Positions 5,809-64,000 of a DNA stretch of 64,000 bases are shown here, in pieces. Within the stretch, counting starts at the first letter, position 1, and each line of letters begins with the position of its first letter. The notes under the pieces were generated by a model. That model saw only the letters and a program-made list of their open reading frames with translations. It searched no databases and was not told where the DNA came from. The position numbers were made by a program, and so were the translations under genes. The stretch covers positions 186,001 through 250,000 of the IMG/VR virus record IMGVR_UViG_3300044633_000899; one strand, written 5' to 3'.

Positions 5809-5815
5809 ATTTTTT

Positions 5816-7440: not shown

Positions 7441-7457
7441 AAGTTTTTTTATTTAAA

Positions 7458-7826: not shown

Positions 7827-7828
7827 TA

Positions 7829-10883: not shown

Positions 10884-10889
10884 ATTATT

Positions 10890-13491: not shown

Positions 13492-13493
13492 AA

Positions 13494-15751: not shown

Positions 15752-15755
15752 ATTA

Positions 15756-16331
15756 CTAAAATCCTGTTGAGCCGAAACCATTATTATTACGATCTTTATC
15801 GTCAATCTTATCTGTTTTAACTAAGTTAACCCATTTACCACACACAACTGGACAAAGTACCGCTTGTGCGATTTTTTGACCAAGATTAATTACAACATCT
15901 TCTTTACTAGTATTAAAAATAATAACTTTAACTTCTGAATTATAACCAAAATCTACAGTTCCGGGAGAATTTAACACCATTAAACCTTGTTTTAATGCCA
16001 ACCCACTTTTACTTCTAACTTGGATTTCATATCCGTCTGGAATATCAAAACTTAATCCAGTCCCAATTAGAACTCGTTCACCGGCTTTAATTATCAGTTC
16101 TTCTGTTGACCTCAAATCAAATCCTGAATCCGTAATGTACGCGTATTCTGGTTGGGGTAGTGTTTCATTAGTGTTAGTGTAATATAACCCAATCTTTGGT
16201 TGATACTCATCTAAAGTTTTTTCTAATTCATTAAAATCAATCCCTAGTTCTCCAACAATACTGTTAATATCAATATCATCAAAATCTGTATTCAAAACGT
16301 TTTTTAACTCGTCAAATTTATTATCATTCAT
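15756..16331 (-). CDS. dut: Trimeric dUTPase with an acidic N-terminal extension
   Basis: SGFDL, QVRSKSGLA, GTVDFGY, IAQAV and RNNNGFGSTG motifs. Confidence 0.95.
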   Translation of the reverse strand: MNDNKFDELKNVLNTDFDDIDINSIVGELGIDFNELEKTLDEYQPKIGLYYTNTNETLPQPEYAYITDSGFDLRSTEELIIKAGERVLIGTGLSFDIPDGYEIQVRSKSGLALKQGLMVLNSPGTVDFGYNSEVKVIIFNTSKEDVVINLGQKIAQAVLCPVVCGKWVNLVKTDKIDDKDRNNNGFGSTGF

Positions 16332-17050
16332 TATTCTAAACTTTTTAATTTCATTATTGCCTCAACTAATACGTCAACATCTCTTTCACAATATTCACCA
16401 ATCTCTTTTAATTTTTGATCTTCCCAATATGCTTTATGAACAGTTGCACCGGTAACCTCACCACCTTTTGGTGTTGGTATGTCTAAACAAGAACATAATA
16501 AATCTAAAGATCCGATTGAGGTGTATGCACCATATTGCCAAATTTCTTTTGTGTCAATCGCTTTAATTTCCCAAGGTTTGGTATCGTATGATGGTAAGAT
16601 TTTTGATGGTCTAATACCGTTAATAATCATTCTTTTTGCCATCATCGGTATGTCAAAGTTTTTTAAATTGTGACCACATAAAAAGAATCCAAGTTTTTCA
16701 CATCTATCTAATAGTGATCTAACATCTTTTAACAAAACTTTCTCATCGTCACCAACAAAAGATTGTTTTTTTGTTTCACCATTCTCAAGAACAAACGCAA
16801 CAGAAACACACACAATTTTGGCAAACTCTGGAACTAACGCAGTTCTTGTTGAGAATATAATGTTTTTTGTTTCGTTTTCATTAGATCCTTTTGTCGCGTC
16901 TTCAGGAAAACGTTTTAAGAACCAGTCATAATATTTATCAAACTGTTCAGCAATGATAGGACTAAATTTTTGACACGCATCATAGTTAGGGTAACCACCA
17001 ACTGTTTCAATATCTAAAAATAAAATTTTTGTTATAGGTATATTTATCAT
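16331..17050 (-). CDS. Stand-alone DEDD 3'-5' exonuclease (PolB-exo-like)
   Basis: FLDIET (ExoI), GHNLKNFDIP (ExoII) and YCERDV (ExoIII). Confidence 0.85.
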   Translation of the reverse strand: MINIPITKILFLDIETVGGYPNYDACQKFSPIIAEQFDKYYDWFLKRFPEDATKGSNENETKNIIFSTRTALVPEFAKIVCVSVAFVLENGETKKQSFVGDDEKVLLKDVRSLLDRCEKLGFFLCGHNLKNFDIPMMAKRMIINGIRPSKILPSYDTKPWEIKAIDTKEIWQYGAYTSIGSLDLLCSCLDIPTPKGGEVTGATVHKAYWEDQKLKEIGEYCERDVDVLVEAIMKLKSLE

Positions 17051-17053
17051 AAA

Positions 17054-18268
17054 TTATTTAATTAAGGATTTGTAAAATGAATATCTATTTGATGTTACAA
17101 CGTTTAAATTGTATGTATCTTTAACGGTTTCGTATAACCTCTCACCAATATCGGTAATAAAGTTTGGATTGTCAACTAATTTTTTAACGTATTTAGCCCA
17201 GTCACTATGATTGTTGTTTTCATTTACAAGTAATGCGTTTCCATCTGTAAATTGACCTTTATCTAATGCGTGTTTTAAATCAATCGTATATGGACCAACA
17301 TTTGATGCAATTAATGCTTTTTTATAAAAACCGGCTTCAATAACCTTTAATTGAGATTTCATTCTGTTAAAAATGTGGTTTTGAATTGGTGCTAAAGATA
17401 TGTCAAACTTTGAGTAATTTTTGGCGTAACTATTTACGGGTCTTGTCCAAACTCTAACATAATTTTCTTTATCAACATTAGGGTAATAACCCTCAACAAA
17501 TGTGTCCAAATATTCTTTATAGTTTGGTGTTATAATTTTATATTTGTTTGTGAAAATTTCTTCATACTTAACCCACACTGTTTCACTAGGGGTAATCGGT
17601 CGTTGTGTTTTTTGACCCGTTTGTTGGTTGATTTCCGTAACAGAACCACGAGTATCAAAACCACAAACATAATATTGTAATTTATCTTGTATAGGTGATA
17701 ACTTTGATACCATACCATCTAATAATTTTAAATCGTGTAAATGTGATGATCCACCCAACCAACCAACACGAATTTTTTCTGACGGTAATGTTGGTTCATT
17801 AAACTGACCTTCATTCGGATCAATAGCGTTTGGTAATACAATAACGTTTTTATTGTATTTTCTAATCTCGTTTGCAAAAATCTCAGTTGTTGTTGTTATA
17901 TAATCTGAAACTTTTATGTTTGCTATAATTTTTTCGTGAATTTTGTTTTGTAATATAATTTGTTGTATTGGATGTTCTTTTGTTGGTAACCAATAGTCAT
18001 CAATATCCATAATAACAACAATACCGATTGATTGTAAATATTTTATAAATTCTGGACAACTTTCATAATCGTTCCCAATATTACGATGAAAGTGTATGAT
18101 TTGATATTTTTTCCAAAAATTTATATTAGTTGTATCAACACTATACTCAATATCCACATGGAATTCATTTGGATACATATTTTGTAGTTTAACGTGTGGA
18201 TCAACTGTACGAAATTTTGATACCCCCGAGGTATCTGATGCGATTGCTAAGACATTAATTTTTTCCAT
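17054..18268 (-). CDS. GT-B glycosyltransferase (GT4-like)
   Basis: DIDDYW, VLPNAID, GWLGGSSH, DISLAP, KSQLKVIEAG and IASNVGPY motifs. Confidence 0.85.
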   Translation of the reverse strand: MEKINVLAIASDTSGVSKFRTVDPHVKLQNMYPNEFHVDIEYSVDTTNINFWKKYQIIHFHRNIGNDYESCPEFIKYLQSIGIVVIMDIDDYWLPTKEHPIQQIILQNKIHEKIIANIKVSDYITTTTEIFANEIRKYNKNVIVLPNAIDPNEGQFNEPTLPSEKIRVGWLGGSSHLHDLKLLDGMVSKLSPIQDKLQYYVCGFDTRGSVTEINQQTGQKTQRPITPSETVWVKYEEIFTNKYKIITPNYKEYLDTFVEGYYPNVDKENYVRVWTRPVNSYAKNYSKFDISLAPIQNHIFNRMKSQLKVIEAGFYKKALIASNVGPYTIDLKHALDKGQFTDGNALLVNENNNHSDWAKYVKKLVDNPNFITDIGERLYETVKDTYNLNVVTSNRYSFYKSLIK

Positions 18269-21346: not shown

Positions 21347-24300
21347 ATGGCACAACAGAATATTAATCAATATGCTTATCAAAAATCTAGATTAAACCTA
21401 GAATATGATAGTATGGATATGTCATTAACTTCAGATGAAAGAGATTATAGTGAAGAAGTTGTTTTCTCGCCTTTTCTTATCGCACAAACATATGGTAAAA
21501 AATTACCAATTAATATTGATATTGATAATTTTTTAACAACACAACCTTTAAATCTTACATATAAAAATTATAACCAAAATAATATTTTTGTATCACAAAA
21601 TTATTACAACCCAAACAATGAGGTTTTAAATTGTTTAACCGCCGATACTGTTTGTGATATTGGTTTAACAGGTATTGATAATGGTTTAGTCAATAAAATG
21701 ACAGGTGAAACGTTAAATTTTACTGAGGGTATATTTGAGGATTCAGTTAAGTTTGATAGATTACATTATGACAGACGATTTAAAATGATTCAAGTCACAG
21801 GATATACTGGAATGTATGAACAATTTTCAGGTGTAACTGGTCAAACATTATACGAGGTTGTTAGTAAAAATGATCCAACTATTGGTAGATACCACGAATT
21901 ATATGGTGGCTTTTACCAAGGATTTTATAAATTATTTGGGTATGATTATGAGATATTACCTGAAAGGGTAACAAAAGGTTGGACCATTGAAATGGTTTTA
22001 AAACCTAGGTTGGAAAACGAATATCAACCAAATTCGGGTGAAACAACATTGAATATGTTATACCCCCAAAATAAAAATATGTTTTTTTACTTGGGTACTA
22101 GAGCAGAAAATAAATTTTATCATTATGCTGATGGTTCACCAAAATGTTTTACTGGTTACACAAGAACAACAACACCATTAGCAAATTGTGTTCAAACTTG
22201 CGCTTGTTGTGATAGAAACATAACAAATAGTAGATGTGTTTATTTATATCCACCAAGATCAAAAGATAACCAACACGACCCCCATTTAAACTATGGTTGT
22301 AACACTTGTAACGGTGATAATGAAAAAAAATTAACTTGTGGTTGTGGATGTGGTGAATCACCTTGTGACACTTGTGGTTGGGAATGTCAAACACATAATT
22401 GTCCTATAATTATTGAACCAACACCGACACCAACACCCGTACCGACCTCAACACCGACTTGTGAGAACACAACACCCGTTTGTACACCAAGTTGTACCAC
22501 TTGTGAAACGTGTACCGATTGTGTTGGTTGTAACACAAATGGTTTTACATCAATTGAGGACACTTGTGAGAAAGATCCATTATTTGATTTAATGTCAAAT
22601 AATATTGCGTTTAAATTATGTGGTGACCCAAAGAACCCATCAATTGGTGTTAAAGTTTTACGTTTTACTGGTGGTTGTGAAACAACTGGGACTTGTACAT
22701 CAGGACAAACATATTTAACCGGTTACACAATTGATGAGTATTGTTCACCACCAATTTATCCAAGATGTCAAAAAGAAAATCCGTCTTGGTTAAATTTGGA
22801 ACATTGGTTTCAAGTGGACGTTACTTGGTCACGTTATACCGATTTTGATTATTGCGACTTAAAATACTTTGGTGGTTTAAGCGATATTACAACAATCACC
22901 CCGTTGGATTCATTAGCAAATAACACCGTTAATTTAATACAACCACCATTGACACATATAAATGAGTTTGGTGAGACAATTGAGATTGTTAATTTAAATC
23001 AAAAATGGTTAGAAGAAAAAAAATATAGATTAGGTAGATTAAAAATTTATGTTAATGGTAAACCGATTTACACCTTAGAAAATTTTGAGGAAGTAATACC
23101 AAGAGCGTTAAACACAGATAAAGAAAAACAATTAGGTGTACCATTTAACATTTCTTGGGGTGGTGGAACACAGGGACTTCACGAGAATTTAACATTTTCA
23201 TCTTGTTCTGGATTAACAAGTGGTTACACACAAGATCCAGAATTGTTTCCAACATCAACATTAAGTGGGACAACATTCTCAGGGTTGACAACAAATATCT
23301 TATTGGAAAAAGAATTTGGTGGAACATTTGAAGGTGCAATATCACAATTTAGAATGTATGTTGAACCATTAAGTGGGGATGAGGTTAAACATAATTTTAA
23401 TATTTTAAAAAATAAATTTGGGATGTTTGATCCAGATTGTCCAGATTGTGGTGATGATTTCTGTGAGGTAGATGATTTCACTTTTGAGATAGTTACAACA
23501 ACAACCACACAACTTCCAACGCCAACACCTAGTGTTACTCCAACTGTTACACCAACTGTTACACCAACACCAACGCCGTCAATGCCAATGTTTGAATTAG
23601 ACCTTACAATTGACGTGACAATAACATCAGGTAGTGTTATTGCTAATGTTGTCGTAACAAATAATACACCAGTAATTCGTGATACAACCGTTAGTTTTGT
23701 GAAGAACTTAGTGTTTGAAGATGATAGGATTGTACCTATTAATATTACAGTATTAATACCACAAGGACAAACATCAATAACGAAACAAATCATTATTGAT
23801 GAAGATTATGATAAATTAACAGAAGATACAAATATTGATATACCAGTAATTGATGTCCACGGTATTGATAATGAACAAATTGTTATTACTGAGACTAGAC
23901 AAATACATTATGAGATACCTGTTAAACCTGGTAAGGTAACCCCAACCCCAACACCGACTAATACACCAACCCCAACACCAACAAGTACACCGACAAGTAC
24001 ACCAATACCGACAAACACACCAACACCAACAAGCACATCTGTTGTTGTGTTACCAACTGTTTATTATGGTAAATATTTAAAACAAAATTTTGATGTTGAT
24101 GATTTAAATTTGTTGGGTACGATTGAAACAAACGAGATTGTGAATAATTATTTAATGTACGCGGCAGTTAACGGTTATTGTTATATGTTAATACCAAATA
24201 CAATGCAACAACCAACAATATTTAGAAATAGTAATGATGGTTGTAGTGGATTTATTATACCGTTCGTAAAAGTTGATGAAATAACAATCATTGATTCTCA

Positions 24301-24379
24301 CGGACAAAATATTATATATTATGTATATAGATCTTTTGTATCAACAAAAGCAAATGTTGATGTATGGATCTGTGATTGA
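21347..24379 (+). CDS. 1010-aa Cys-rich, Pro/Thr-tract virion protein with LamG/concanavalin-like segments
   Basis: WTIEMVLKP, LKIYVNG and FEGAISQFRMY (LamG-like), CxxC clusters and three (PT)n tracts. Confidence 0.6.
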   Translation: MAQQNINQYAYQKSRLNLEYDSMDMSLTSDERDYSEEVVFSPFLIAQTYGKKLPINIDIDNFLTTQPLNLTYKNYNQNNIFVSQNYYNPNNEVLNCLTADTVCDIGLTGIDNGLVNKMTGETLNFTEGIFEDSVKFDRLHYDRRFKMIQVTGYTGMYEQFSGVTGQTLYEVVSKNDPTIGRYHELYGGFYQGFYKLFGYDYEILPERVTKGWTIEMVLKPRLENEYQPNSGETTLNMLYPQNKNMFFYLGTRAENKFYHYADGSPKCFTGYTRTTTPLANCVQTCACCDRNITNSRCVYLYPPRSKDNQHDPHLNYGCNTCNGDNEKKLTCGCGCGESPCDTCGWECQTHNCPIIIEPTPTPTPVPTSTPTCENTTPVCTPSCTTCETCTDCVGCNTNGFTSIEDTCEKDPLFDLMSNNIAFKLCGDPKNPSIGVKVLRFTGGCETTGTCTSGQTYLTGYTIDEYCSPPIYPRCQKENPSWLNLEHWFQVDVTWSRYTDFDYCDLKYFGGLSDITTITPLDSLANNTVNLIQPPLTHINEFGETIEIVNLNQKWLEEKKYRLGRLKIYVNGKPIYTLENFEEVIPRALNTDKEKQLGVPFNISWGGGTQGLHENLTFSSCSGLTSGYTQDPELFPTSTLSGTTFSGLTTNILLEKEFGGTFEGAISQFRMYVEPLSGDEVKHNFNILKNKFGMFDPDCPDCGDDFCEVDDFTFEIVTTTTTQLPTPTPSVTPTVTPTVTPTPTPSMPMFELDLTIDVTITSGSVIANVVVTNNTPVIRDTTVSFVKNLVFEDDRIVPINITVLIPQGQTSITKQIIIDEDYDKLTEDTNIDIPVIDVHGIDNEQIVITETRQIHYEIPVKPGKVTPTPTPTNTPTPTPTSTPTSTPIPTNTPTPTSTSVVVLPTVYYGKYLKQNFDVDDLNLLGTIETNEIVNNYLMYAAVNGYCYMLIPNTMQQPTIFRNSNDGCSGFIIPFVKVDEITIIDSHGQNIIYYVYRSFVSTKANVDVWICD

Positions 24380-32184: not shown

Positions 32185-33369
32185 TTAAAAATACAAATTG
32201 GTTTTAGGGTTATAAACCAATTCACCATTCCCCCCATTAAATAAACCCTCAATTAACATATCATACGTTTTAATAACGTCTTCGTTACTTATATGATATC
32301 TTTGTAAAACCTTATCGTTTCGTTGATTATAACGGTCAATATCAGCGTCATGCTCAACCAATACTTGATTTAATAATTTAGCCGCCTCAACGGTATCAGA
32401 ACCCTCATAATAATAACCCAAATCTTTACACATAGGAGCGTTATGTAATACAGGATAACCCAAATAAACAGCGTCCAAATATAAATAATTTAATGGGTTT
32501 AATAATTGGTGACATATTAATATATCCAAATGTTGTGTTAACATAAATGCTGTTTGATATCTTGATTCAGCACTAATCTTTCCTTCTTTATATAAATCAA
32601 AGGTTTCAATGATTGACATAAATTCCCTATGTTTTGATACGGTGGTAGCATTTGTTATTCTTAATTTTTCAATACGTTTTCTACCTTCAGATGTTCTATA
32701 TGATTCTTCAGCAATCATCGCTGGAATTAAACAAAATTTAACAATATTTAAGTTTGGTTCCATAATACCCAAAATCTTTTTTTCTTTGGTATTATCATAT
32801 TGCCAATCCTTTTTATATTTCCCATCTTTAAAACCTTTATGTATTTCAACAACAGATTCGTGTAGATATTTTTCAGACCAAATAAATGGTACTGGTATTG
32901 CATTAACACGATATAGTGTTTTATATAATCCAGAATTTACCTCGTGTTGTTGTGGTACATACCATACTTCATCATATTGTTTTTCGTATTGGAATTTTTT
33001 ACTCTCACTTTGTTTAAATAAAATATTTTCCATATGGATTACATAGTTATTTCCACACTTATAAGATACAACCTTTTTATTTTTTCCAGATTTTTTAAAG
33101 GTTTCAAGTTGATGGTCAAATATTTGGGCACCCATACAAATAATCAAATCCATTTCCATAAAAACATCATTGAAGTAATGTACATCAATATCTGTTAAAT
33201 AAGATGGTTTTTCTGTAAAATCAACATTCGTAGAGTTTAATATGCAGACATCATAATTTTTGGTTGATTTTTTTAATAGTTCAACCAACATCAATACATT
33301 TTGTTTAATACCATTTGTCCAGATGGATTCTTTGTTGTCTTTAAGACCTAATGTAATACCTATTTTCAT
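32185..33369 (-). CDS. DUF2827-family protein (putative GT-B glycosyltransferase)
   Basis: IWTNGIKQN, YKCGNNY, IMEPNLNIVK and HQLLNPLNYLYLDAVYLGYPVLHNA motifs. Confidence 0.8.
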   Translation of the reverse strand: MKIGITLGLKDNKESIWTNGIKQNVLMLVELLKKSTKNYDVCILNSTNVDFTEKPSYLTDIDVHYFNDVFMEMDLIICMGAQIFDHQLETFKKSGKNKKVVSYKCGNNYVIHMENILFKQSESKKFQYEKQYDEVWYVPQQHEVNSGLYKTLYRVNAIPVPFIWSEKYLHESVVEIHKGFKDGKYKKDWQYDNTKEKKILGIMEPNLNIVKFCLIPAMIAEESYRTSEGRKRIEKLRITNATTVSKHREFMSIIETFDLYKEGKISAESRYQTAFMLTQHLDILICHQLLNPLNYLYLDAVYLGYPVLHNAPMCKDLGYYYEGSDTVEAAKLLNQVLVEHDADIDRYNQRNDKVLQRYHISNEDVIKTYDMLIEGLFNGGNGELVYNPKTNLYF

Positions 33370-34583: not shown

Positions 34584-35372
34584 ATGAGTCAATTAATAAC
34601 AATAAATAGTGTATCATATGATGGTGAATTGGCAACAATTTTATTTAAACCAGACAATTCAAATGATGTTATTAATTTTGGTGTTGTTACATTACCGTTT
34701 GTATTTAATTCGGGTTTATTAACACCCCCAAGGGATGTTTATGGTAGTTATACAATATTGGTTGATGGTTCAGATTGTTCAAAAATTATGAATGTACCTA
34801 GACCAACACCCACACCAACACCAACGGTAACACCCACTCGGACTGTTACCCCAACACCTACGACAACACCGACACCAACACCAACAAACGATCCGTGTCC
34901 AACAAAGACACCGACACCAACACCGACCTCAACACCACAACCAACAAGAACCCCCACAAGGACACCAACACCGACACCAACGTCAAGTCCGTGTAAAACA
35001 CCTACGCCAACACCGACACCAACAACAAGTTTGTTGCCGTCATCGTCTGGTATTTATTTTGGTAAATTTAGTGGTTCAACAATAACAAGTGGTAATGTGT
35101 CAACGTTTACTTTTGTTTTAACAAACAACCCGACAAATTCATATGTTACATTTCAAACTGGAAGTGCGTATGGATATATTTTAATACCAATATCATTATC
35201 ACAACCAACAGGATTTAGAGATAGTGATGCTGGTTGTAGTGGATTTAATATACCAATAAATAATATTGGGACAATAATTATAATAGACGGAAATGGTTTC
35301 CCAATAACATATAATATATATAGAACATTCTATCCATTCTTTGGTGATACAGATTGTTGGTTATGTAATTAA
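34584..35372 (+). CDS. Pro/Thr-tract (mucin-like) virion protein
   Basis: About 75-aa (PT)n tract with interspersed Cys. The C-terminal domain is homologous to the end of 21347. Confidence 0.75.
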
Positions 35373-39334: not shown

Positions 39335-39517
39335 ATGGAAAGAAAATTTAGTTTTGTAATTAACTGCACGGATGTTGACAATTACGCTTTAGTATGTTCA
39401 AGTTGGAAATTAGATAATGAGGGAAACCGAATTGACCAACAATCTGAAACCAAAACACAAATTAGTCTTGAAGAGACATTTATTGAACAAAAAATATTTA
39501 CAGAAAAATGGCTTTAA
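39335..39517 (+). CDS. 60-aa protein, copy 2
   Basis: MERKFSFVINCTD...QSETKTQISLE, as in copy 1. Confidence 0.75.
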   Translation: MERKFSFVINCTDVDNYALVCSSWKLDNEGNRIDQQSETKTQISLEETFIEQKIFTEKWL

Positions 39518-40692
39518 AATATCCTTTAGCAAATGGTGTATGGTCTAACGCTGCAAATTGGAATGGTGGAACTTTACCAGTTCCTGGTGACGATGTAAGG
39601 GCTAATGGTTTTACCGTTACAATTGACGTTGATATAGATGTTTTACAAATTGCCACCGTCGCATTAGCACCCGCTGTTGCTGGTGGTACATTTACTGTGA
39701 GTACTAATCGTAATATAACAGCCAACATTAATGCTGGAAGTAGTAGTTGTTTAACATCAGCGAGTGGTGTCATTGTAAATGTTATTGGTAACATAAATGC
39801 TGGTAGTGGGAATGTAATACATGGTATAAATTTTACTAATGCGGGTTCTATATTAAATGTAACAGGAAACGTTACCGCTGGTAGTTCTGTAAATAATCAG
39901 TCTGGAATTAATTCATCTGGTACTGTTAACTTTATTGGAAACGCTACAGGTTCTGCTGTTGGTTTTGGTTCTTCAGCAATTAATATAGGTACAAGTGGAA
40001 TATTAAATTTTACAGGAACCGCTACAGGTGGAAATGCTGGTAATACATCTTACGCTATTTTAACTGCTGGTAATGGTACATATAATGGAACTATAACTGG
40101 TGGTGGTGCTGGAGGTTCAGTTGGTGTTAGAATAACTGCTGGTGTTCATACTATTAATTCTGATTGTTTTGGTGGTACTGGTGCCCTTTCACATGGTGTT
40201 CAAATGTTAACATCTACAGCAACATTCAACGGTAATATATTTGCTGGTAGTGTTACTAATTCACAAGCCGTTTTAATATCAACATCTACCGCAACATTTA
40301 ATGGTAATATATTTGGTTCAACATCATCATTATCTTTAGGTCTTAGTGTGTCTGATACCGCATCAAATGTTGTTATTTCAACGATGACACTCAGTACAAA
40401 TGGTGGTTTACCAGTTAATGGATTCGTTAAGTTTAAAAATACAGCACCTACAATTACGGTAAGAAAAGCAAACAATACAAACCAAACACTTGTTGACCCC
40501 TCAACAACTGATATACCAGTAATTGGTGATGTTAGAGATGGTATAGTTTACGCAAGCGGCTCATTAACAGGAACATTAAAAGTTCCACCAGTCAATGCTG
40601 TAAGTGTGGGTGTTCCAAATGATAATACGGTAGGTACTGCGGTTATTGATATAAATGATATGGGAGCATTACTGGCTAGTTATGTTGCGTGA
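39508..40692 (+). CDS. Gly/Thr/Asn-rich beta-helix adhesin-like protein, copy 2
   Basis: Termini nearly identical to 38189, with a divergent and longer centre. Confidence 0.7.
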   Translation: MALKYPLANGVWSNAANWNGGTLPVPGDDVRANGFTVTIDVDIDVLQIATVALAPAVAGGTFTVSTNRNITANINAGSSSCLTSASGVIVNVIGNINAGSGNVIHGINFTNAGSILNVTGNVTAGSSVNNQSGINSSGTVNFIGNATGSAVGFGSSAINIGTSGILNFTGTATGGNAGNTSYAILTAGNGTYNGTITGGGAGGSVGVRITAGVHTINSDCFGGTGALSHGVQMLTSTATFNGNIFAGSVTNSQAVLISTSTATFNGNIFGSTSSLSLGLSVSDTASNVVISTMTLSTNGGLPVNGFVKFKNTAPTITVRKANNTNQTLVDPSTTDIPVIGDVRDGIVYASGSLTGTLKVPPVNAVSVGVPNDNTVGTAVIDINDMGALLASYVA

Positions 40693-41198
40693 TGATGATA
40701 ACGATAACAGGATCAACAGGAATAGGACCATACCAAGTTCAAGTTTGTGATATAACAAACACAACTTGTATTATTGTAACTGGTTCAACAACAATACCCC
40801 CCAGTTTTACATTTGATGTTCCATCACCATTAGATGGTGTGTCGTCATTGTTAGTTAAAATTATTGATTCAAATGGGTGTGAGGTGTTCCAAGTTTATTC
40901 TTGTCCCCCAACACCGACACCAACACCAAGTGTTACCCCCACACCTACCCCAACACCTACAAACTTATGTTATTGTATCACAGTTCAAAACAGTGGTGTT
41001 ACAGATGGTTATTTTGATTATGTTGATTGTAATAGTAATCAACAAACAAATGTTTTAGTTCAAGGTGGTGTAACGTATTATACTTGTGGTGTCAATCCTA
41101 CAAATGAAATAAATGTTATAACAACTGTTGGTGGTTTATGTGATTCAAACCAATCTTGTCCGACACCAACTTGTACACCAACACCATCAACAACTTAA
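40689..41198 (+). CDS. Small Cys- and Pro/Thr-rich virion protein
   Basis: [20 protein letters not shown] and CPTPTCTPTPSTT tracts. Confidence 0.7.
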   Translation: MMMITITGSTGIGPYQVQVCDITNTTCIIVTGSTTIPPSFTFDVPSPLDGVSSLLVKIIDSNGCEVFQVYSCPPTPTPTPSVTPTPTPTPTNLCYCITVQNSGVTDGYFDYVDCNSNQQTNVLVQGGVTYYTCGVNPTNEINVITTVGGLCDSNQSCPTPTCTPTPSTT

Positions 41199-41241: not shown

Positions 41242-42486
41242 ATGTCAACAATATTTGTTCAGATAGCATCGTATAGAGATCCCCAACTTAAAATAACAGT
41301 TGAGGATATGATTAATCAATCAAAACACCCAGAAAATTTACGTATTGGTATTTGTAATCAGTATTCACCAGATGATGAATTTAACATTGACCAATATCAA
41401 GATGACCCAAGGTTTAGAATTGATAATGTTCTTTATACCGAATCAAAAGGTGTTTGTTGGGCTCGTCATATGGTACAACAAAGGTATAGTGGTGAAACGT
41501 ATACGTTACAGATTGATTCACATATGCGTTTTGAGAAAAACTGGGATGAGGAATTAATTAATATGATTGTTGGTTTACAAAACAAAGGTGTTAAAAAACC
41601 ATTGTTAACTGGTTATGTATCATCTTTTGATCCAGATAATGACCCAAAGGGTAGAGTTGTGGATCCGTGGAGAATGGTATTTGATAGATTCACACCAGAG
41701 GGTTGTGTTTTCTTTTTACCAGAAGTTATTCCAAACTGGAAGGAATTAAAAGAACCAATACCCGCAAGATTTTATTCGGCACATTTTTGTTTTACATTAG
41801 GTAAATTTTCAGAGGAAGTTCAACACGATTCGGAATACTACTTTCACGGTGAGGAGATTTCAATTGCGGTTAGAGCGTTTACTTATGGGTATGATTTATA
41901 CCATCCGCATAAAGTTTTGGTTTGGCATGAATATCTCAGATCTAACAGAGTAAAATGTTGGGATGATGATAAGGTGTGGTACAAAAAGAATGACGCGTCA
42001 CACAAAAGAAATAGAGAATTATTTGGTATTGATGGTGAAAAGTTTTCTGGTGATACGTCACAATATTTTGGTACAGAAAGAACTTTAAGTGATTATGAAA
42101 AATACGCGGGAATTTTATTTGAGAAACGTGCGGTACAACAATATACATTAGACAAACAATATCCACCAAATCCATATAATTTCAATAATGATGATGAATG
42201 GAAAAATTCTTTTTTAAGAATATTTAAACATTGTATTGATTTATCTTTTGATCTTGTTAAAGAAACCGATTATGATTTTTGGGTTGTTGCGTTTCATAAT
42301 GAAAAAGACGAAACATTATTTAGACAAGACGCACAAACGGATGAGATTAATAGAATGATGAAAGATAAAGATGGGTATTGTAAAATTTGGAGAGAATTTA
42401 ATGCAACAGAAAAACCTAAATATTGGGTGGTTTGGCCACATAGTACATCAAAAGGTTGGTGCGATAGAATAACAGGAAATTTATGA
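41242..42486 (+). CDS. GT60 (Pfam GlcNAc) polypeptide alpha-GlcNAc transferase-like, with a C-terminal extension
   Basis: TIFVQIASYRD, GVCWARH, YTLQIDSHMRF..NWD, FHGEEI and GYDLYHP..LVWHEY match the Gnt1/OGNT family. Confidence 0.88.
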   Translation: MSTIFVQIASYRDPQLKITVEDMINQSKHPENLRIGICNQYSPDDEFNIDQYQDDPRFRIDNVLYTESKGVCWARHMVQQRYSGETYTLQIDSHMRFEKNWDEELINMIVGLQNKGVKKPLLTGYVSSFDPDNDPKGRVVDPWRMVFDRFTPEGCVFFLPEVIPNWKELKEPIPARFYSAHFCFTLGKFSEEVQHDSEYYFHGEEISIAVRAFTYGYDLYHPHKVLVWHEYLRSNRVKCWDDDKVWYKKNDASHKRNRELFGIDGEKFSGDTSQYFGTERTLSDYEKYAGILFEKRAVQQYTLDKQYPPNPYNFNNDDEWKNSFLRIFKHCIDLSFDLVKETDYDFWVVAFHNEKDETLFRQDAQTDEINRMMKDKDGYCKIWREFNATEKPKYWVVWPHSTSKGWCDRITGNL

Positions 42487-44141
42487 TCACATTAGTAACA
42501 GGTTTATGGGATATAGGTAGAGGTGAGTTATCAGAAGGTTGGTCTCGTTCATACGAACATTACCTTGATAAGTTTTCACAATTATTAAAAGTGGAAAATG
42601 ATATGATAATCTTTGGTGATCACAAATTAAAAGAATTTGTTTTCCAACACAGAGAAGAATATAACACACAATTTATTTTAAGAGAATTATCTTGGTTTAA
42701 AAATAATGAATTTTACGACCCCATCCAAAGAATAAGAACAAACCCTTCTTGGTATAATCAGGTTGGTTGGTTAAAGGATTCCACTCAAGCAAAACTTGAG
42801 ATGTATAACCCGTTGGTTATGTCAAAAATGTTTTTATTAAATGACGCAAAACTTTTGGATAAATTTAATTCTGATCGTTTATTTTGGGTTGACGCGGGAA
42901 TAACAAACACCGTTAACCCAGGATATTTTACACACGATAAAGTTTTAGATAAAATATCATTTGATAAGTTTACATTTGTGTGTTTCCCATATGATGCGAA
43001 TACGGAAGTTCACGGGTTTGATTATAAAAAAATGTGTGAGTTATCTGGTACTAAAACCAAAGTTGTTGCTCGTGGTGGATTTTTTGGTGGTGACAAGGAT
43101 TCAATATCACAGATGAATGTTTTGTATTATAATTTATTGGTTGAAACATTGAACTCTGGGTATATGGGTACTGAAGAATCGTTATTTACAATTCTTTTAT
43201 ATCAACACCCTTCACTTATTGATTATTGTGAAATTGAATCAAATGGGTTGGTGTTTAAATTTTTTGAGGATTTAAAGAATGATAAGGTTGTTTTGAAAAA
43301 TGAAGGGAAGAAGATTGTTCCAAACCATAATGGGGATGTTGGTTTATATGTAATTACATTTAATTCACCAAAACAATTTGAGACATTAATAAAATCAATG
43401 TTGGATTATGATCCGAACTTTATTCATAAAACAAAAAAGTTTTTGCTTGATAACTCAACAGATTTAACTACAACACCAAGATATAGAGAATTATGTGATG
43501 AATATGATTTTATTCATATTAAAAAGAATAACATCGGAATAACGGGTGGAAGAGTTTTTATTGCGGAACATTTTAACGACCAAGAAAACCTATCACATTA
43601 TTATTTTTTTGAGGATGATATGGAATTTTATAGTGGGAAAGATGTTACTTGTAAAAATGGATTTGTGAGAAATATTGATAATTTATTTGATAAGTCAATT
43701 GAGATTATTAAAAAAGAAAACTTTGATTATTTGAAGTTAAACTTCACCGAGTTCTATGGATCACACAACAAACAGTGGTCTTGGTATAATGTAAGTCAGG
43801 AATTTAGGGAAAAACATTGGCCAAATAATCCGAAACTTCCAAAACAAGGTCTTGATCCATATTCTCCAAATCTTGAATTTAAACATATCAAATCACATAA
43901 AGGACTGGCGTATGTTTCTGGTGAAATCTATTTATCCAATTGGCCAATAGTAATGACAAAAGAAGGAAACTATAATTGTTATATTAAAACAAAATTCCAA
44001 CACCCATATGAACAGGTCCTAATGTCACATTGTTATCAAGAAACAATCAAAGGAAATATTAAACCAGGATTACTTCTTGCAACACCAACGGAACACCACC
44101 GATTTGATTTCTATGAAGGTTCATTAAGAAAAGAATATTAA
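42483..44141 (+). CDS. WlaTC/HtrL(YibB)-family glycosyltransferase fused to a GT-A-like domain
   Basis: ITLVTGLWDIGR, FWVDAG, GGFFGG and GTEESLFT in domain 1. VITFNSP, LDNST and YFFEDDM in domain 2. Confidence 0.8.
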   Translation: MITLVTGLWDIGRGELSEGWSRSYEHYLDKFSQLLKVENDMIIFGDHKLKEFVFQHREEYNTQFILRELSWFKNNEFYDPIQRIRTNPSWYNQVGWLKDSTQAKLEMYNPLVMSKMFLLNDAKLLDKFNSDRLFWVDAGITNTVNPGYFTHDKVLDKISFDKFTFVCFPYDANTEVHGFDYKKMCELSGTKTKVVARGGFFGGDKDSISQMNVLYYNLLVETLNSGYMGTEESLFTILLYQHPSLIDYCEIESNGLVFKFFEDLKNDKVVLKNEGKKIVPNHNGDVGLYVITFNSPKQFETLIKSMLDYDPNFIHKTKKFLLDNSTDLTTTPRYRELCDEYDFIHIKKNNIGITGGRVFIAEHFNDQENLSHYYFFEDDMEFYSGKDVTCKNGFVRNIDNLFDKSIEIIKKENFDYLKLNFTEFYGSHNKQWSWYNVSQEFREKHWPNNPKLPKQGLDPYSPNLEFKHIKSHKGLAYVSGEIYLSNWPIVMTKEGNYNCYIKTKFQHPYEQVLMSHCYQETIKGNIKPGLLLATPTEHHRFDFYEGSLRKEY

Positions 44142-44196: not shown

Positions 44197-44661
44197 ATGG
44201 AGTGGTTCATAAAAAAAGGTGCGACATTACCCTTGTTAAAATTGTCGGTTGTGAAAGACGGTCGCAGCGACTATAATAATTTTATGGATTTTATTGAGGA
44301 ATCGTCAATCTTTTTTTCAATGGTTGACCTTGAAACTGGTATTCCAAAAATTATGACGAAACCAGCGGGGTTTGTTAAGAAAGATCTTATGGATCCAAAC
44401 GCACCAACAGAATATTATATTTATTACCAATTCACATCACAAGATACAAAAAAAACTGGAAGATATGAAGGTCAGTTTTTATTTAGAAATGAAGAAGGTA
44501 CATTAATTCTACCAATTAGAGATCGGTTATTTATTAACATACAAGAAAGTTTTATCGCCGATGATTTACCATATGAGAGTTGTTACGTATCAGAATTTCC
44601 TTGTTGTGTTAAAACACCAATCATTCCAATAACAACAACCACAACAACAATAATCTTTTAA
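44197..44661 (+). CDS. BppU-like baseplate/fibre adaptor Ig-fold protein
   Basis: FIKKGATLPLL..V and YQFTSQDT...G.YEGQF pattern; Thr-tract at the C-terminus. Confidence 0.55.
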   Translation: MEWFIKKGATLPLLKLSVVKDGRSDYNNFMDFIEESSIFFSMVDLETGIPKIMTKPAGFVKKDLMDPNAPTEYYIYYQFTSQDTKKTGRYEGQFLFRNEEGTLILPIRDRLFINIQESFIADDLPYESCYVSEFPCCVKTPIIPITTTTTTIIF

Positions 44662-61866: not shown

Positions 61867-61986
61867 AAGTAGAAAAAAGGTAGAAAAAAAACCTACCTAT
61901 CTATAAATACTTTTAAGTATGTAAAGTTTTTGATAAAAACGTGAATATTTATTAATAAAATAAAATTATAAATAAAATTAAAATCT

Positions 61987-64000
61987 ATGGCAACTAACAG
62001 TAAAATATTTGTATCACCAGGTGTTTATACTTCAGAAGTGGATTTAAGTTTTGTCGCGCAGAGTGTTGGTGTTACAACACTTGGTATTGCGGGGGAAACT
62101 TTAAAAGGTCCGGCTTTTGAACCAATTTTCATTAAAAACTTTGACGAATTCCAAAATTATTTTGGGGGTACGTCACCGGAAAAATTTGTTAATACACAAA
62201 TTCCGAAATATGAAGCGTCGTACATCGCAAAAGCGTATCTACAACAATCTAATCAATTATTTGTAACTAGAATCCTTGGATTATCTGGTTATGATGCGGG
62301 ACCATCTTGGTCAATTGTAACTAAAGCAAACGTTGATCCAACAACCGTTGATTTTATGTGTGAAAGTGGTCAAACGATTGATTGTGAATTTGTTTGTCAA
62401 GAACCAAGTGGTAACACGTTTAGTTTTGGATTTGTCGGTTGTACAAATTCGTCTGAAACAATTGAATATTCTGAAACTTCATTACCAATTCAAATTGAAA
62501 GTATGTTGACCACACAATATGAAACATTTAATGGGTCTGTATCAACATTGGATGCAAACATTAGAAGTTTGATTAGTGGTGTTATGGCCGAACCATCAAC
62601 ATCAGCAGATACTATTAGTTATTTCGGTTCAATTTGGGGTGACGATTATAGTACTTTATCAACATTGTTTACAAACGAAAATAATGTGTTTAATGTTCCC
62701 TCACCATCAAGTGAGTTAACAGACTACACATCACCATTTAACGATCCTTGGTATTACGCTCAATTTGAAAACATTGGTAATGGTTTATACTCAGGTTTTT
62801 CATTCTTCTTATATGTTGACGAATTATCTGAAATTATACCAGTAACAACAACAACAACAACGTTACCACCAACTCCAACTCCAACACCAGATCCGTGTAA
62901 TCCAACACCAACTACAACAACAACGACAACAACACAACCAGAGGTTATTACTTGTTATTCAGGTAATGTTGTTGGTAAAATTTATTACTATTCAGGTATT
63001 TCTTATACGGAATATGATAATTTAGTTGTTGGAACATTAAGATCTAGAGGTATCGCAACATACGCTGACGGTAATAATCCAGTATTTGAGGTTTCAGCAA
63101 CAACAAATGTTACTTTAAATATGGGTGGTCAGTATAGTCCTGTTCTTAAAGATCCGTATATGCCGTTTGCGATAAATGTAACAAATAACACTGGTACTAA
63201 CTTTGTTTTTGAAGCGTCATTTTCTCAATCCGATTCACAATATATTGCTAAAGTATTTGGTGGTACAAATTTTGGGAAACCAAGAACCTCAACACCATTG
63301 TTTTTAGAAGAGAATTTCCAATCAATATTAAATTACGGATGGAAAAAAGGTTATATTAGAGGTTTAAGTTCTGATTTAATTGCGTTGGATTCGGCTCAAA
63401 GTAACGATTCATCATCAATTGGTTGGTATTTAGATAAATATCAAACACCATCTTCACCTTGGGTTGTTTCTGAATTAAGAGGTAATAAAACATTTAACCT
63501 ATTTAAATTCTATACAATATCTGATGGTAATTCAGCAAACAGCGAGGTTAAAGTTTCATTTATTAATATGTCATTCAATAACAGAACTTTTGATGTTTTA
63601 GTTAGAGATTATTATGATGTTGACGCAAATCCAGTTGTACTTGAGAAATTTACAAACTGTACAATGGATCCGTCACAAAATAATTTTATCGCGAAAAAAA
63701 TCGGTACACTAGATGGTGAATACCAGTTAAATTCAAAATATATAATGGTTGAAATGAATGAGGACGCACCTACAGATGCTTTACCTTGTGGTTTTGATGG
63801 TTATGTGTTTAGAGAATACGCTGACGCTAAATCACCATTCCCAGTTTATAAAACAAAATATGATTTCCCTGGTGAGGTTGTTTATAACCCCCCATTTGGT
63901 TTCTCAAGCGGAAATGACGATGCAATAATTTCTGGTGGTGATAATGTTAGAAAAACATATTTAGGATTTTCTAATAACATCGGATTTGATACTAGTTTCT
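61987..64000 (+). CDS. Contractile tail sheath protein, partial; runs off the right edge
   Basis: Manual translation MATNSKIFVSPGVYTSEVDLSFVAQSVGVTTLGIAGETLKGPAFEP..FDEF...FGG...LFVTRILG. Confidence 0.92.
   Translation, partial: MATNSKIFVSPGVYTSEVDLSFVAQSVGVTTLGIAGETLKGPAFEPIFIKNFDEFQNYFGGTSPEKFVNTQIPKYEASYIAKAYLQQSNQLFVTRILGLSGYDAGPSWSIVTKANVDPTTVDFMCESGQTIDCEFVCQEPSGNTFSFGFVGCTNSSETIEYSETSLPIQIESMLTTQYETFNGSVSTLDANIRSLISGVMAEPSTSADTISYFGSIWGDDYSTLSTLFTNENNVFNVPSPSSELTDYTSPFNDPWYYAQFENIGNGLYSGFSFFLYVDELSEIIPVTTTTTTLPPTPTPTPDPCNPTPTTTTTTTTQPEVITCYSGNVVGKIYYYSGISYTEYDNLVVGTLRSRGIATYADGNNPVFEVSATTNVTLNMGGQYSPVLKDPYMPFAINVTNNTGTNFVFEASFSQSDSQYIAKVFGGTNFGKPRTSTPLFLEENFQSILNYGWKKGYIRGLSSDLIALDSAQSNDSSSIGWYLDKYQTPSSPWVVSELRGNKTFNLFKFYTISDGNSANSEVKVSFINMSFNNRTFDVLVRDYYDVDANPVVLEKFTNCTMDPSQNNFIAKKIGTLDGEYQLNSKYIMVEMNEDAPTDALPCGFDGYVFREYADAKSPFPVYKTKYDFPGEVVYNPPFGFSSGNDDAIISGGDNVRKTYLGFSNNIGFDTSF

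What the first reader, a model, noticed from the sequence alone, without database searches (positions are those of the whole stretch)
41242..44141. Candidate mucin-type O-glycosylation system for the phage virion
Seen: a GT60-family enzyme translationally coupled to an HtrL/GT-A double glycosyltransferase sits inside the structural region, directly after a PT-rich gene (40689). Pro/Thr or poly-Thr tracts occur in 21347 (three), 34584, 40689, 44197 and the tail sheath (62839-62940). Known: GT60 members are polypeptide alpha-GlcNAc transferases (Dictyostelium Gnt1 on Skp1 hydroxyproline, Trypanosoma cruzi OGNT on mucin Thr), related to GT27 GalNAc-Ts. Inference: GT60 primes Thr in the PT tracts, and the other ~11 GTs and tailoring enzymes extend and decorate the glycan. 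The result would be a mucin-like glycan coat that could shield against proteases, mimic host glycans or aid adhesion.
Basis: partly seen in the sequence, partly recalled or inferred. Interest (0 to 1): 0.85.

Follow-up and report, generated by a model that had tools for sequence, protein, structure and literature searches.

The report
Jumbo-phage GT60 protein-glycosylation gene module
A large environmental phage carries a conserved pair of sugar-adding enzyme genes whose first member looks like the enzymes that start mucin-type sugar coats on proteins in eukaryotes. It sits among proteins with proline/threonine-rich stretches, so the phage probably sugar-coats its own particle proteins, though no experiment has shown this.

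Summary
ORF 41242-42486 is a strong PF11397 (GT60) match. Its AlphaFold model (pLDDT 96) best matches polypeptide GalNAc-transferases. ORF 42483-44141 overlaps it by ATGA and has an HtrL_YibB domain plus a GT2-like GT-A domain with an invariant EDD motif. All listed Pro/Thr tracts exist.

- The GT60 and HtrL/GT-A genes occur together in 82 of 85 related loci; 561 viral contigs encode a GT60 relative. Swappable sugar-tailoring genes lie between them.
- In some bacteria all three domains are fused into one protein.
- PT-rich genes cluster beside GT60 homologues in bacterial genomes: 17 of 43 lineages within four genes, 1 of 37 further away.
- Distant cultured relative CM1 has about 14 PT-tract proteins. 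XacN1, which has the module, has stained virion glycoproteins and restriction-cuttable DNA.

Not shown:
- the acceptor, the sugar, and virion location;
- any link to the distant glycosyltransferase block;
- the "tail sheath" call, which has only weak support.

The module's conserved anchor is next to the DNA polymerase, and the fibre-like genes around it vary. PT tracts are also common linkers. This is a new variant of known phage virion glycosylation, and the mechanism is inferred.

The parts
41242..42486 (+). GT60-family (PF11397) GT-A glycosyltransferase, the predicted initiating enzyme. It is soluble, with invariant D92-x-H94 and H229, and has a conserved C-terminal alpha/beta domain of about 110 aa (roughly residues 300-414) of unknown role.
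   Evidence: Pfam 5.5e-68. phrog_24687 1e-158. AF2 pLDDT 96, pTM 0.90. Top 32 PDB Foldseek hits are ppGalNAc-T enzymes. Invariant residues from alignment A2. No TM segment.
42483..44141 (+). Two-domain glycosyltransferase, the predicted extension enzyme. The N-terminal domain is HtrL_YibB-type (WxDAG, MGTEES motifs). The C-terminal domain is GT2-like GT-A (VITFN, DNSTD, NxGIxxGR, E377-D378-D379).
   Evidence: PF09612 1.9e-20. Below the YibB equivalog cutoff. Motifs conserved to XacN1, RAS14 and the bacterial fusions. Atlas look-alikes are HtrL+GT2. ATGA overlap with the upstream gene.
40689..41198 (+). Small Cys-containing two-domain protein with an internal PT linker and a PT-rich C-terminus; a candidate acceptor.
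   Evidence: Translation and tracts. A homologue lies within the locus in 46 of 85 related loci, often directly upstream of GT60. The only look-alikes are viral hypothetical proteins, with weak SprB / Ig-like leads.
44197..44661 (+). T154-family protein: a conserved N-domain of about 130 aa ending in ...FPCC, followed by a poly-Thr tail. It is a candidate acceptor and virion fibre anchor.
   Evidence: Present downstream of HtrL in 72 of 85 loci. The C-terminus varies: none, poly-Thr, or a PT linker plus large variable domains. BppU_N-like by Atlas, a lead only.
34584..35372 (+). 262-aa protein with a PT-rich region of about 75 aa (aa 74-148); a candidate acceptor.
   Evidence: Weak phrog_15511 match. 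Homologues in 29 of 85 loci.
21347..24379 (+). 1010-aa protein with three PT-rich regions; a candidate acceptor, probably a virion fibre or decoration protein.
   Evidence: Weak hits to virion-structural phrog_8510 and to phrog_15511.
61972..64000 (+). ORF running off the window end, with a poly-Thr / PT tract at nt 62845-62934; possibly the tail sheath.
   Evidence: Tract. No Pfam or PHROG hit. Marginal N-terminal match to sheath protein 9ezm_A, E 0.0038.
3945..18268 (-). Sugar-biosynthesis and tailoring block: two single-domain GT2 proteins, one protein with two GT2-type domains, two weak GT1/GT4-like hits, PhyH-type 2OG oxygenase, hexapeptide acyltransferase, SAM methyltransferase, WbqC, and a short DegT-like ORF. 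PhoH, dUTPase and an exonuclease are interspersed. It may supply or extend the same glycan; the link is untested.
   Evidence: Pfam scans. The PhyH protein weakly resembles a carbohydrate-cluster 2OG oxygenase.
32185..33369 (-). DUF2827 protein. It is a neighbour of the module in the close relatives L001-L003; its function is unknown.
   Evidence: PF10933 2.2e-101. Two copies lie upstream of GT60 in L001-L003. A homologue was found in only 6 of 85 loci.

Best explanation
The two genes form the conserved core of a phage-encoded, cytoplasmic protein O-glycosylation pathway.

**Shown**
- ORF A is a soluble GT-A enzyme of the PF11397/GT60 family. It has the DxH...H signature, and its fold is closest to the polypeptide GalNAc-transferases.
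- ORF B is a two-domain glycosyltransferase (HtrL-type plus GT2-like).
- The two genes are linked across hundreds of jumbo-phage contigs. In some bacteria all three domains are fused into one polypeptide.
- In relatives, the space between the two genes holds interchangeable sugar-tailoring genes.

**Inferred**
- ORF A transfers a first HexNAc, probably GlcNAc from host UDP-GlcNAc, onto Thr in the Pro/Thr-rich linkers and tails of phage proteins. Hydroxyproline is a less likely acceptor.
- Candidate acceptors are fibre- or decoration-like virion proteins made in the same cytoplasm, including the flanking genes at 40689 and 44197.
- ORF B then adds the next one or two sugars.
- Lineage-specific methyl-, carbamoyl- and glycosyl-transferases finish a glycan that differs between related phages.
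- The outcome would be glycosylated, extended PT spacers on exposed virion parts.
For: **Enzyme identity**
- PF11397 match; AF2 pLDDT 96.
- All top-32 PDB neighbours are mucin-type initiating ppGalNAc-T enzymes. Polysaccharide and teichoic-acid GT-A enzymes rank below them.
- Invariant D92, H94 and H229.
- No TM segment in either protein.
- The literature defines GT60 as the polypeptide alpha-GlcNAc transferases that start mucin-type O-glycosylation on Ser/Thr-rich domains, plus Gnt1 on Skp1 hydroxyproline.

**Coupling of the two genes**
- HtrL lies in the same locus in 82 of 85 loci.
- P0184 and P0200 fuse GT60, HtrL and the GT-A domain in one chain.
- An HtrL homologue lies within four genes, or is fused, in 27 of 75 bacterial loci.

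**Protein acceptor**
- PT-rich genes lie within four genes of GT60 homologues in 17 of 43 bacterial lineages, against 1 of 37 at ranks 5-8. By gene slots this is 22/523 against 1/366, Fisher p = 1.2e-4.
- Pfam domain hits confirm seven of ten of these neighbours as real proteins. They include a VgrG spike, a crAss-type muzzle protein, a PqqD-domain protein with a PT tail (PqqD domains bind peptides in RiPP pathways; my recall), and CBM/fn3 proteins.
- GT60 domains are fused to P4H-type oxygenase domains (PF13640), not TET/JBP-type.
- 3 of 119 viral loci chosen only for a PT tract contain GT60, against a base rate near 0.02%.
- 69 of 83 low-GC related loci have PT tracts.
- CM1 has about 14 PT-tract ORFs.

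**Virion location**
- XacN1, whose ORF334 is 47.6% identical to ORF A, has two Schiff-positive virion bands.
- The neighbour at 44676 hits virion and tail-spike PHROGs.
- T154 is BppU_N-like (a lead).

**GlcNAc hint**
- In L297, GT60 is followed by a GT7 / beta4-GalT-family gene. Terminal GlcNAc as that family's usual acceptor is my recall.

**Variable glycan**
- The slot between the two genes holds CmcI-like and FkbM methyltransferases, GT25, GT10, GT1 or a carbamoyltransferase.
Against: - No biochemical or proteomic data exist for this phage.
- Acceptor specificity cannot be read from a GT-A fold.
- PT tracts are common flexible linkers: 116 of 119 PT-selected viral loci show no GT60 nearby.
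- A sub-clade keeps GT60 and HtrL although its T154 protein ends at ...CC with no Thr tail.
- The XacN1 and RAS14 loci have no PT tract within 9 kb of the module.
- The module's conserved anchor is beside replication genes: PolB here, DNA polymerase and RNase H in XacN1, DnaB and a DNA methyltransferase in L296.
- HtrL is named after a gene of the E. coli LPS-core cluster.
- No prolyl hydroxylase was found in the window.
- The rank-enrichment test used crude ORF calling and could not be repeated after the script machine was lost. PT-rich surface proteins and glycosyltransferases could share islands for indirect reasons.
- The XacN1 glycoprotein bands were never identified or tied to ORF334.
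Confidence: 0.45

Rival explanations
1. The module does glycosylate phage (virion) proteins, but the PT tracts are merely flexible linkers. The real sites lie elsewhere, for example on folded capsid, sheath or fibre domains, or on C-terminal extensions as in mycobacteriophages.
For: - XacN1 has virion glycoproteins but no PT tract near its module.
- Tail-less T154 proteins coexist with GT60 and HtrL.
- PT linkers are widespread without GT60.
- Mycobacteriophage glycans sit on capsid and tail-tube C-termini (summarised in PMC12619734).
Against: - PT-rich genes are enriched next to GT60 homologues in unrelated bacteria.
- CM1, a close relative of RAS14, has many PT-tract proteins elsewhere in its genome.
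- Characterised GT60 and GT27 enzymes prefer Thr/Ser/Pro-rich unstructured acceptors.
Confidence: 0.2
2. The enzymes act on a non-protein acceptor. They would build or alter an oligo- or polysaccharide or glycolipid, for example remodelling the host envelope (LPS/LOS core, capsule) during infection or making a free phage glycan. The PT association would then be incidental.
For: - The HtrL_YibB family takes its name from an LPS-core-cluster gene.
- The window carries a large amino-sugar and glycosyltransferase block typical of O-antigen-like pathways.
- GT-A enzymes change acceptors readily in evolution.
- Foldseek also finds GlfT2, TarS and K4CP at E about 1e-8.
Against: - No Wzx/Wzy, ABC exporter, polyprenyl-phosphate transferase or Gtr-type membrane component was detected in the 64-kb window or in the sampled contexts.
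- Both proteins are soluble.
- Polypeptide transferases outrank all polysaccharide enzymes structurally.
- PT-gene enrichment and P4H fusions point to protein.
- The HtrL part scores far below the YibB equivalog cutoff.
Confidence: 0.18
3. The module hypermodifies phage DNA. It would glycosylate (and in relatives carbamoylate) hydroxymethylated bases to evade restriction, as T-even phages and the recently described 5hmC-glycan phages do.
For: - It recurs next to replication genes.
- A dUTPase/dCTP-deaminase-like gene lies in the sugar block.
- Phage GT-A and GT-B enzymes are known to put diverse glycans on DNA.
Against: - Known DNA GT-A enzymes are JGT-like, with R...DDD...EDY/F motifs, and are linked to 5mYOX or ThyS. 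ORF A has DxH...H and is GT27-like.
- No thymidylate-synthase-like hydroxymethylase or TET/JBP domain was found in the window.
- XacN1 DNA is cut by BssHII, NaeI and SpeI.
- Homologues sit in bacterial chromosomes beside PT-rich proteins and are fused to P4H-type domains.
Confidence: 0.07

Closest known systems
CAZy GT60 polypeptide alpha-GlcNAc transferases (Dictyostelium pp-alphaGlcNAcT2, Trypanosoma cruzi OGNT) and cytosolic Gnt1 of the Skp1 pathway
   Same: - Same Pfam family (PF11397), GT-A fold, DxH...H signature, and no ricin lectin domain.
- Gnt1 is likewise soluble and cytoplasmic.
- Gnt1 is followed in its pathway by PgtA, a two-domain bifunctional glycosyltransferase. This parallels GT60 followed by HtrL/GT-A here.
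   Different: - Phage-encoded and prokaryotic, with an extra conserved C-terminal domain of about 110 aa.
- The partner is HtrL+GT2-like, not GT74+GT2.
- No prolyl hydroxylase was found in the window.
- Donor, linkage and acceptor are untested.
GT27 polypeptide GalNAc-transferases (animal mucin-type O-glycosylation initiation)
   Same: Closest solved structures (E 7e-12 to 5e-9, the top 32 hits). The spacing between the DxH motif and the distal His is similar (spacing comparison from my recall of GalNAc-T2). Their preferred acceptors are Thr/Ser/Pro-rich unstructured tracts.
   Different: Only 10-17% sequence identity. No ricin-type lectin domain. Not a Golgi membrane protein. No sequence-level PDB hit.
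Mycobacteriophage virion glycosylation (Freeman et al. 2023) and XacN1 virion glycoproteins (Yoshikawa et al. 2018)
   Same: Phage-encoded glycosyltransferases are thought to decorate virion proteins in the host cytoplasm. XacN1 carries the orthologous GT60, carbamoyltransferase and HtrL module and has Schiff-positive virion bands.
   Different: The Freeman paper was not held, so its enzyme families could not be compared. In XacN1 the bands were not identified and no enzyme-substrate link was made. The PT-tract acceptor idea and the GT60 assignment are new here.
Serine-rich-repeat adhesin glycosylation in Gram-positive bacteria (GtfA/GtfB plus extension GTs); recalled from general knowledge, not tested here
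   Same: It works in a similar way: cytoplasmic priming with GlcNAc on long Ser/Thr-rich repeats of a surface fibre protein, followed by strain-variable extension glycosyltransferases encoded beside the substrate gene.
   Different: The priming enzyme there is a GT-B (GT4) enzyme, unrelated to GT60. The substrate is exported by an accessory Sec system, and the repeats are Ser-rich rather than Pro/Thr.
Giant-virus autonomous glycosylation (chlorovirus capsid glycans, mimivirus fibrils)
   Same: The virus encodes sugar-nucleotide, transferase and tailoring genes to decorate its own particle. PF11397-like proteins occur in Megaviridae and Pandoravirus.
   Different: Those are eukaryotic viruses with different linkages and enzymes. 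No PT-tract logic has been described for them.

Membership tests
Pfam PF11397 'GlcNAc' / CAZy GT60 | Profile match above the curated gathering score | tested here: met
   230.4 bits against a cutoff of 21, E 5.5e-68.
Pfam PF11397 'GlcNAc' / CAZy GT60 | GT-A fold related to GT27, with a DxH...H metal-site signature | tested here: met
   AF2 pLDDT 96. Top 32 PDB Foldseek hits are GT27. D92, H94 and H229 are invariant in 44 diverse sequences. Their assignment to metal binding is by analogy.
Pfam PF11397 'GlcNAc' / CAZy GT60 | Lacks the C-terminal ricin-type lectin domain of GT27 | tested here: met
   No ricin or other second Pfam domain. A different conserved alpha/beta domain of about 110 aa is present instead. 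Criterion taken from PMC8724618.
Pfam PF11397 'GlcNAc' / CAZy GT60 | Transfers alpha-GlcNAc from UDP-GlcNAc to Thr/Ser or Hyp of a polypeptide | not testable with these tools
   Indirect hints only: PT-gene neighbourhood enrichment, P4H fusions, a GT7 neighbour in L297.
HtrL_YibB (PF09612 / TIGR02192) | Domain-level profile match | tested here: met
   PF09612, 74.1 bits against a cutoff of 24.1, residues 2-248.
HtrL_YibB (PF09612 / TIGR02192) | Equivalog of E. coli YibB (NCBIfam trusted cutoff) | tested here: not met
   75.7 bits against a cutoff of 264.9, and 45.5 against 342. Same domain family, not the same protein.
GT2-like GT-A (C-terminal half of ORF B) | GT2 profile match, or the canonical motif series with DxD | tested here: inconclusive
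   No Pfam hit. VITFN / DNSTD / NxGIxxGR / EDD are conserved in 10 divergent homologues. Atlas neighbours are HtrL+GT2 and GT2-like folds. The single-sequence AF2 model was unusable.
Phage virion glycosylation systems | Phage-encoded glycosyltransferases plus demonstrated glycans on virion proteins | not testable with these tools
   The GTs are present. Glycoproteins are shown only for the relative XacN1, by Schiff staining of unidentified bands.
Phage DNA sugar hypermodification | GT linked to a 5hmC/5hmU-generating enzyme (ThyA-like hydroxymethylase or 5mYOX/TET) | tested here: not met
   No such domain in the 64-kb window. The rest of the 296-kb genome was not seen. XacN1 DNA is restriction-digestible.
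Phage DNA sugar hypermodification | JGT-like GT-A with R...DDD...EDY/F motifs, or a T4-type GT-B | tested here: not met
   ORF A has DxH...H and is GT27-like. Criterion taken.
Skp1-type hydroxyproline glycosylation | Partner prolyl 4-hydroxylase | tested here: not met
   No P4H-like ORF in the window by phmmer with the P0122 and P0123 oxygenase regions. The window's PhyH protein resembles carbohydrate-cluster oxygenases. P4H fusions do exist in bacterial homologues.

The most novel reading that the evidence does not exclude
PF11397 enzymes, together with HtrL/GT2 partners and PT-rich substrate proteins, form a widespread prokaryotic and phage 'mucin-type' O-glycosylation system. It would be a cytoplasmic, lipid-carrier-independent pathway related to the eukaryotic GT60/GT27 initiating enzymes, and possibly ancestral to them. 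In aquatic jumbo phages it would sit in a hypervariable island that gives each lineage a different glycan on the extended PT spacers of its fibres. In bacteria it would decorate VgrG spikes, secreted enzymes and peptide products.
Probability: 0.3. Interest if true: 0.85.

Novelty: new variant of a known kind. Interest (0 to 1): 0.62.

Why it matters
Mucin-type initiation by GT27/GT60-type polypeptide HexNAc-transferases is treated as a eukaryotic trait. Phage virion glycosylation is known from only a few cases.

If the inference holds, several things follow.
- A very abundant group of environmental jumbo phages decorates Pro/Thr-rich spacers of its particle proteins with lineage-specific glycans. 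The group spans 561 viral contigs and thousands of metagenomic proteins.
- This would affect how we think about phage adsorption, stability, recognition by hosts and grazers, and phage 'serotypes'.
- It would give PT linkers in phage and bacterial proteins a testable second role.
- It would place the origin of the GT60/GT27 lineage among prokaryotes and their viruses.
- The natural three-domain fusions and the public XacN1 proteomics data make the question directly testable.

Tried and rejected
- **DNA search.** A near-identity DNA search of the phage collection found nothing.
- **PDB by sequence.** Sequence and profile searches of the PDB found no solved relative of ORF A.
- **ORF B structure.** Single-sequence AF2 of ORF B gave pLDDT 31 and was discarded.
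- I rebuilt the alignment without it.
- **Literature.** Searches for GT60 or PF11397 in phages found nothing relevant. The Freeman 2023 paper is not held.
- **Hydroxyproline route.** I considered a Pro hydroxylation step because bacterial homologues are fused to P4H domains. I found no P4H in the window, and the PhyH gene looks sugar-directed. For this phage I therefore keep it only as a minor alternative.
- **T154 tail as sole substrate.** I considered the 44197-family tail as the dedicated substrate. I rejected it as the sole substrate because one sub-clade lacks the tail.
- **Whole-genome PT scan.** Fetching the annotated RAS14 record was too bulky after one call. I replaced it with the unannotated sister genome CM1.
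- **Reverse co-occurrence test.** The planned tblastn test failed when the script machine was lost. I replaced it with a degenerate DNA motif scan.
- **Promoters.** Promoter-like matches were no more frequent than in shuffled sequence, so I drew no operon inference from them.
- **Matched negative control.** A comparison with whole genomes of jumbo phages lacking GT60 was not done.

Full report
**What is there**

The window is part of a 296-kb IMG/VR viral contig: L006 is identical DNA. GC content is about 30%. At the reported coordinates there are two same-strand ORFs, 41242-42486 (414 aa) and 42483-44141 (552 aa). They overlap by ATGA.

- **First ORF.**
  - It matches Pfam PF11397 'GlcNAc', the GT60 family, at E 5.5e-68. 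It matches a phage glycosyltransferase PHROG over its full length.
  - An AlphaFold2 model built from 44 diverse homologues is very confident, with pLDDT 96 and pTM 0.90.
  - Its 32 best PDB neighbours are all polypeptide GalNAc-transferases. GlfT2, TarS and chondroitin polymerase rank below them.
  - D92, H94 and H229 are invariant, which fits the DxH...H metal site of that enzyme class.
  - No solved structure is detectable by sequence.
- **Second ORF.**
  - It has an HtrL_YibB domain at residues 2-248, well below the YibB equivalog cutoff.
  - Its C-terminal half has no Pfam hit. It carries the GT2 motif series VITFN, DNSTD, NxGIxxGR and an invariant EDD, conserved out to XacN1, RAS14 and bacterial fusion proteins. 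Its Atlas look-alikes are HtrL+GT2 architectures.
- **Solubility and tracts.**
  - Neither protein has a membrane segment.

**Surroundings**

- The flanking genes are repeat-rich with few family matches.
  - The ORF at 44676 hits virion-structural and tail-spike PHROGs.
  - The 44197 protein resembles the BppU_N anchor domain of baseplate fibres (a lead only).
  - The ORF at 61972 has only a marginal N-terminal match to a solved tail sheath protein.
  - A family-B DNA polymerase lies at 48277.
- A minus-strand block at 3945-18268 encodes several GT2 and GT1-like enzymes, a PhyH-type oxygenase, an acyltransferase, a methyltransferase, WbqC and a short DegT-like ORF.
- No terminator-like site separates 40689, the two GT genes and 44197. 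Promoter-like matches are at chance level.

**Relatives**

- The family is abundant.
  - 6,690 proteins match in the large database, and the best 120 are at least 70% identical.
  - There are 4,417 representatives at the 50% clustering level.
  - 561 viral contigs encode a relative, many of them 100-300 kb long.
  - Among cultured phages, only XacN1, Xoo-sp13 and the Stenotrophomonas phages CM1 and RAS14 have it, at 43-48% identity.
- Across 85 loci the order is GT60, a variable insert of 0-6 kb, HtrL/GT-A (82 of 85), a 44197-family gene (72 of 85), then PolB (60 of 85). A homologue of the PT gene at 40689 lies within 46 of 85 loci, often directly upstream.
- The insert holds interchangeable sugar-tailoring genes: a CmcI-like rhamnosyl O-methyltransferase, an FkbM methyltransferase, GT25, a GT10-like protein, a GT1-like protein or a carbamoyltransferase. 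The two window genes are therefore the conserved ends of a hypervariable glycan island. Their 4-bp coupling is the special case with no insert.
- The 44197 family has a conserved N-domain of about 130 aa ending in ...PCC. What follows is nothing, a poly-Thr tail, or PT linkers leading to large variable domains. This is the layout of an anchored fibre with a variable distal part.

**Evidence that the two genes work together**

Two bacterial proteins, P0184 and P0200, carry GT60, HtrL and the GT-A domain in one chain. An HtrL homologue lies within four genes of the GT60 homologue, or is fused to it, in 27 of 75 bacterial loci.

**Evidence on the acceptor**

1. Giant bacterial proteins fuse several GT60 domains to P4H-type 2OG oxygenase domains (PF13640), not TET/JBP-type. 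This echoes the Skp1 pathway, in which a prolyl hydroxylase precedes Gnt1.
2. In 75 loci from species-representative bacterial genomes, PT-rich ORFs lie within four genes of the GT60 homologue.
   - By gene slots the counts are 22 of 523 near the homologue against 1 of 366 at ranks 5-8 (Fisher p = 1.2e-4).
   - After collapsing to 43 lineages at 60% identity, the counts are 17 of 43 against 1 of 37.
   - Seven of ten of these neighbours were confirmed as real proteins by Pfam domain hits: a VgrG spike with a PT-rich C-terminus, a crAss-type muzzle protein, a PqqD-domain protein with a PT tail, a sedolisin-type peptidase, and CBM96/fn3, fn3/BNR and laminin-G proteins.
   - In L086, a PT linker of about 150 aa lies in the gene immediately upstream of a GT60-HtrL fusion.
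3. PT tracts occur in 69 of 83 low-GC viral loci. The distant cultured phage CM1 has about 14 large PT-tract ORFs.
4. Of 119 viral loci chosen only for encoding (TP)4, three contain the GT60 motif, against a base rate near 0.02% of contigs. One of them, L202, shows the same PT-gene, GT60, HtrL layout. These three may belong to the same clade.
5. XacN1 has two Schiff-positive virion bands, which its authors tentatively ascribed to ORF328 and ORF334. ORF334 is the GT60 orthologue, followed by a carbamoyltransferase and the HtrL homologue.
6. In one phage-like contig, GT60 is followed by a GT7 (beta4-GalT family) gene. That family's usual acceptor is terminal GlcNAc, which I state from recall.

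**Rivals**

- **DNA hypermodification.** The recurrent proximity to replication genes suggests it. Four points argue against it.
  - Known DNA-directed GT-A enzymes are JGT-like with DDD motifs and are tied to 5mYOX or ThyS.
  - No such partner gene is in the window.
  - XacN1 DNA is cut by BssHII, NaeI and SpeI.
  - The bacterial contexts are not about DNA.
- **Polysaccharide or envelope acceptor.** The HtrL name and the sugar block suggest it. No flippase, polymerase, lipid-carrier transferase or membrane GT was seen in the window or the sampled contexts, and both enzymes are soluble.
- **Protein glycosylation at non-PT sites.** This remains the strongest rival, for three reasons. PT tracts are generic linkers. 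A sub-clade keeps the enzymes without the Thr tail on the 44197 homologue. The XacN1 and RAS14 modules have no PT gene nearby.

**Verdict**

The acceptor, the sugar, the virion location and the biological role remain inferred. The link between this module and the distant glycosyltransferase block is untested.

Phage virion glycosylation and GT60 are each known. New here are their combination, the conserved three-domain module with its variable island, and the PT-protein association across phages and bacteria. I therefore rate it a new variant of a known kind, with moderately high interest.

**Limits**

- The script machine was lost, so the rank analysis could not be refined.
- There is no matched GT60-negative control.
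- Only 64 kb of the 296-kb genome was visible.
- Atlas results are leads only.

Noticed in passing
window 38016-40692 (+): A two-gene cassette is tandemly duplicated. A 60-aa ORF (MERKFSFVINCTD...) is followed by a Gly/Asn/Thr-rich protein of about 380 aa that looks beta-helix-like (MALKYPLA.GVWSNA...). The copies lie at 38016-39307 and 39335-40692 and are clearly paralogous in the translations. Only L006, which is the same DNA as the window, gave a hit for the 394-aa protein among 85 loci.
   Followed up: partly
window 52754-56671 (-): Five ORFs of about 148 aa flank a 507-aa protein with a central Fe/Mn superoxide dismutase domain. One pair compared is 35% identical (E 3e-24). The SOD fusion is conserved in relatives, where it is 733 aa in L001.
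   Followed up: partly
window 12850-13491 (-): The DegT/DnrJ aminotransferase-like ORF is only 213 aa, and its best stretch covers profile positions 24-98 of 360. It may be truncated, split or degenerate inside the amino-sugar block.
   Followed up: no
window 28075-32107 (+): An 899-aa leucine-rich-repeat protein and a 432-aa DUF285 (BspA-like) repeat protein lie side by side. Such repeats are typical of cell-surface proteins of Bacteroidota and Firmicutes. DUF285-like ends also appear as variable C-termini of the 44197 family in relatives.
   Followed up: no
L143 12270-15131 (-), also L135, L140, L111, L158: In Ralstonia, Achromobacter, Paraburkholderia and Paraherbaspirillum genomes, a large ORF with a Pro/Thr-rich C-terminus lies three genes from the GT60 homologue. 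In L143 it is a type VI secretion VgrG spike (Phage_GPD, Gp5_trimer_C, Phage_base_V). The others were judged similar from their N-terminal sequences only. A glycosylated spike linker would be unexpected.
   Followed up: partly
L104 9230-9952 (+), L100: In Gemmatimonadaceae, a 241-aa protein with a PqqD domain and a PT-rich tail sits immediately upstream of the GT60 and HtrL genes. PqqD domains recognise peptides in RiPP pathways (my recall), which hints at peptide glycosylation.
   Followed up: partly
L087 10001-17386 (P0122); P0123: Giant bacterial chromosomal proteins (2,461 and 1,641 aa) combine about four GT60 domains with P4H-type 2OG oxygenase domains; P0122 also has a peroxiredoxin domain. 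In L087 a sulfotransferase gene lies next door. Their function is unknown.
   Followed up: partly
L089-L093 (genome contigs): The closest hits in 'cellular' genomes (63-66% identity) are contigs binned into Saprospiraceae, Bacteroidia and Melainabacteria MAGs, one of them 230 kb long. They are probably phage contigs binned with their host. Together with the SprB / Por_Secre_tail-like leads for the 40689 protein, this hints at a Bacteroidota host.
   Followed up: no
L202 2500-3078 (+) and 7675-8220 (-): Two HNH-type endonuclease-like genes bracket the glycosylation module in this relative. One is inserted between the PT gene and GT60, which suggests mobile-element traffic in the island.
   Followed up: no
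L297 9185-10771 (+): A phage-like contig encodes a GT7 (beta-1,4-galactosyltransferase family) protein directly after its GT60 homologue, with a PTPS/QueD-like gene nearby. As far as I recall, GT7 is a mainly eukaryotic family.
   Followed up: no
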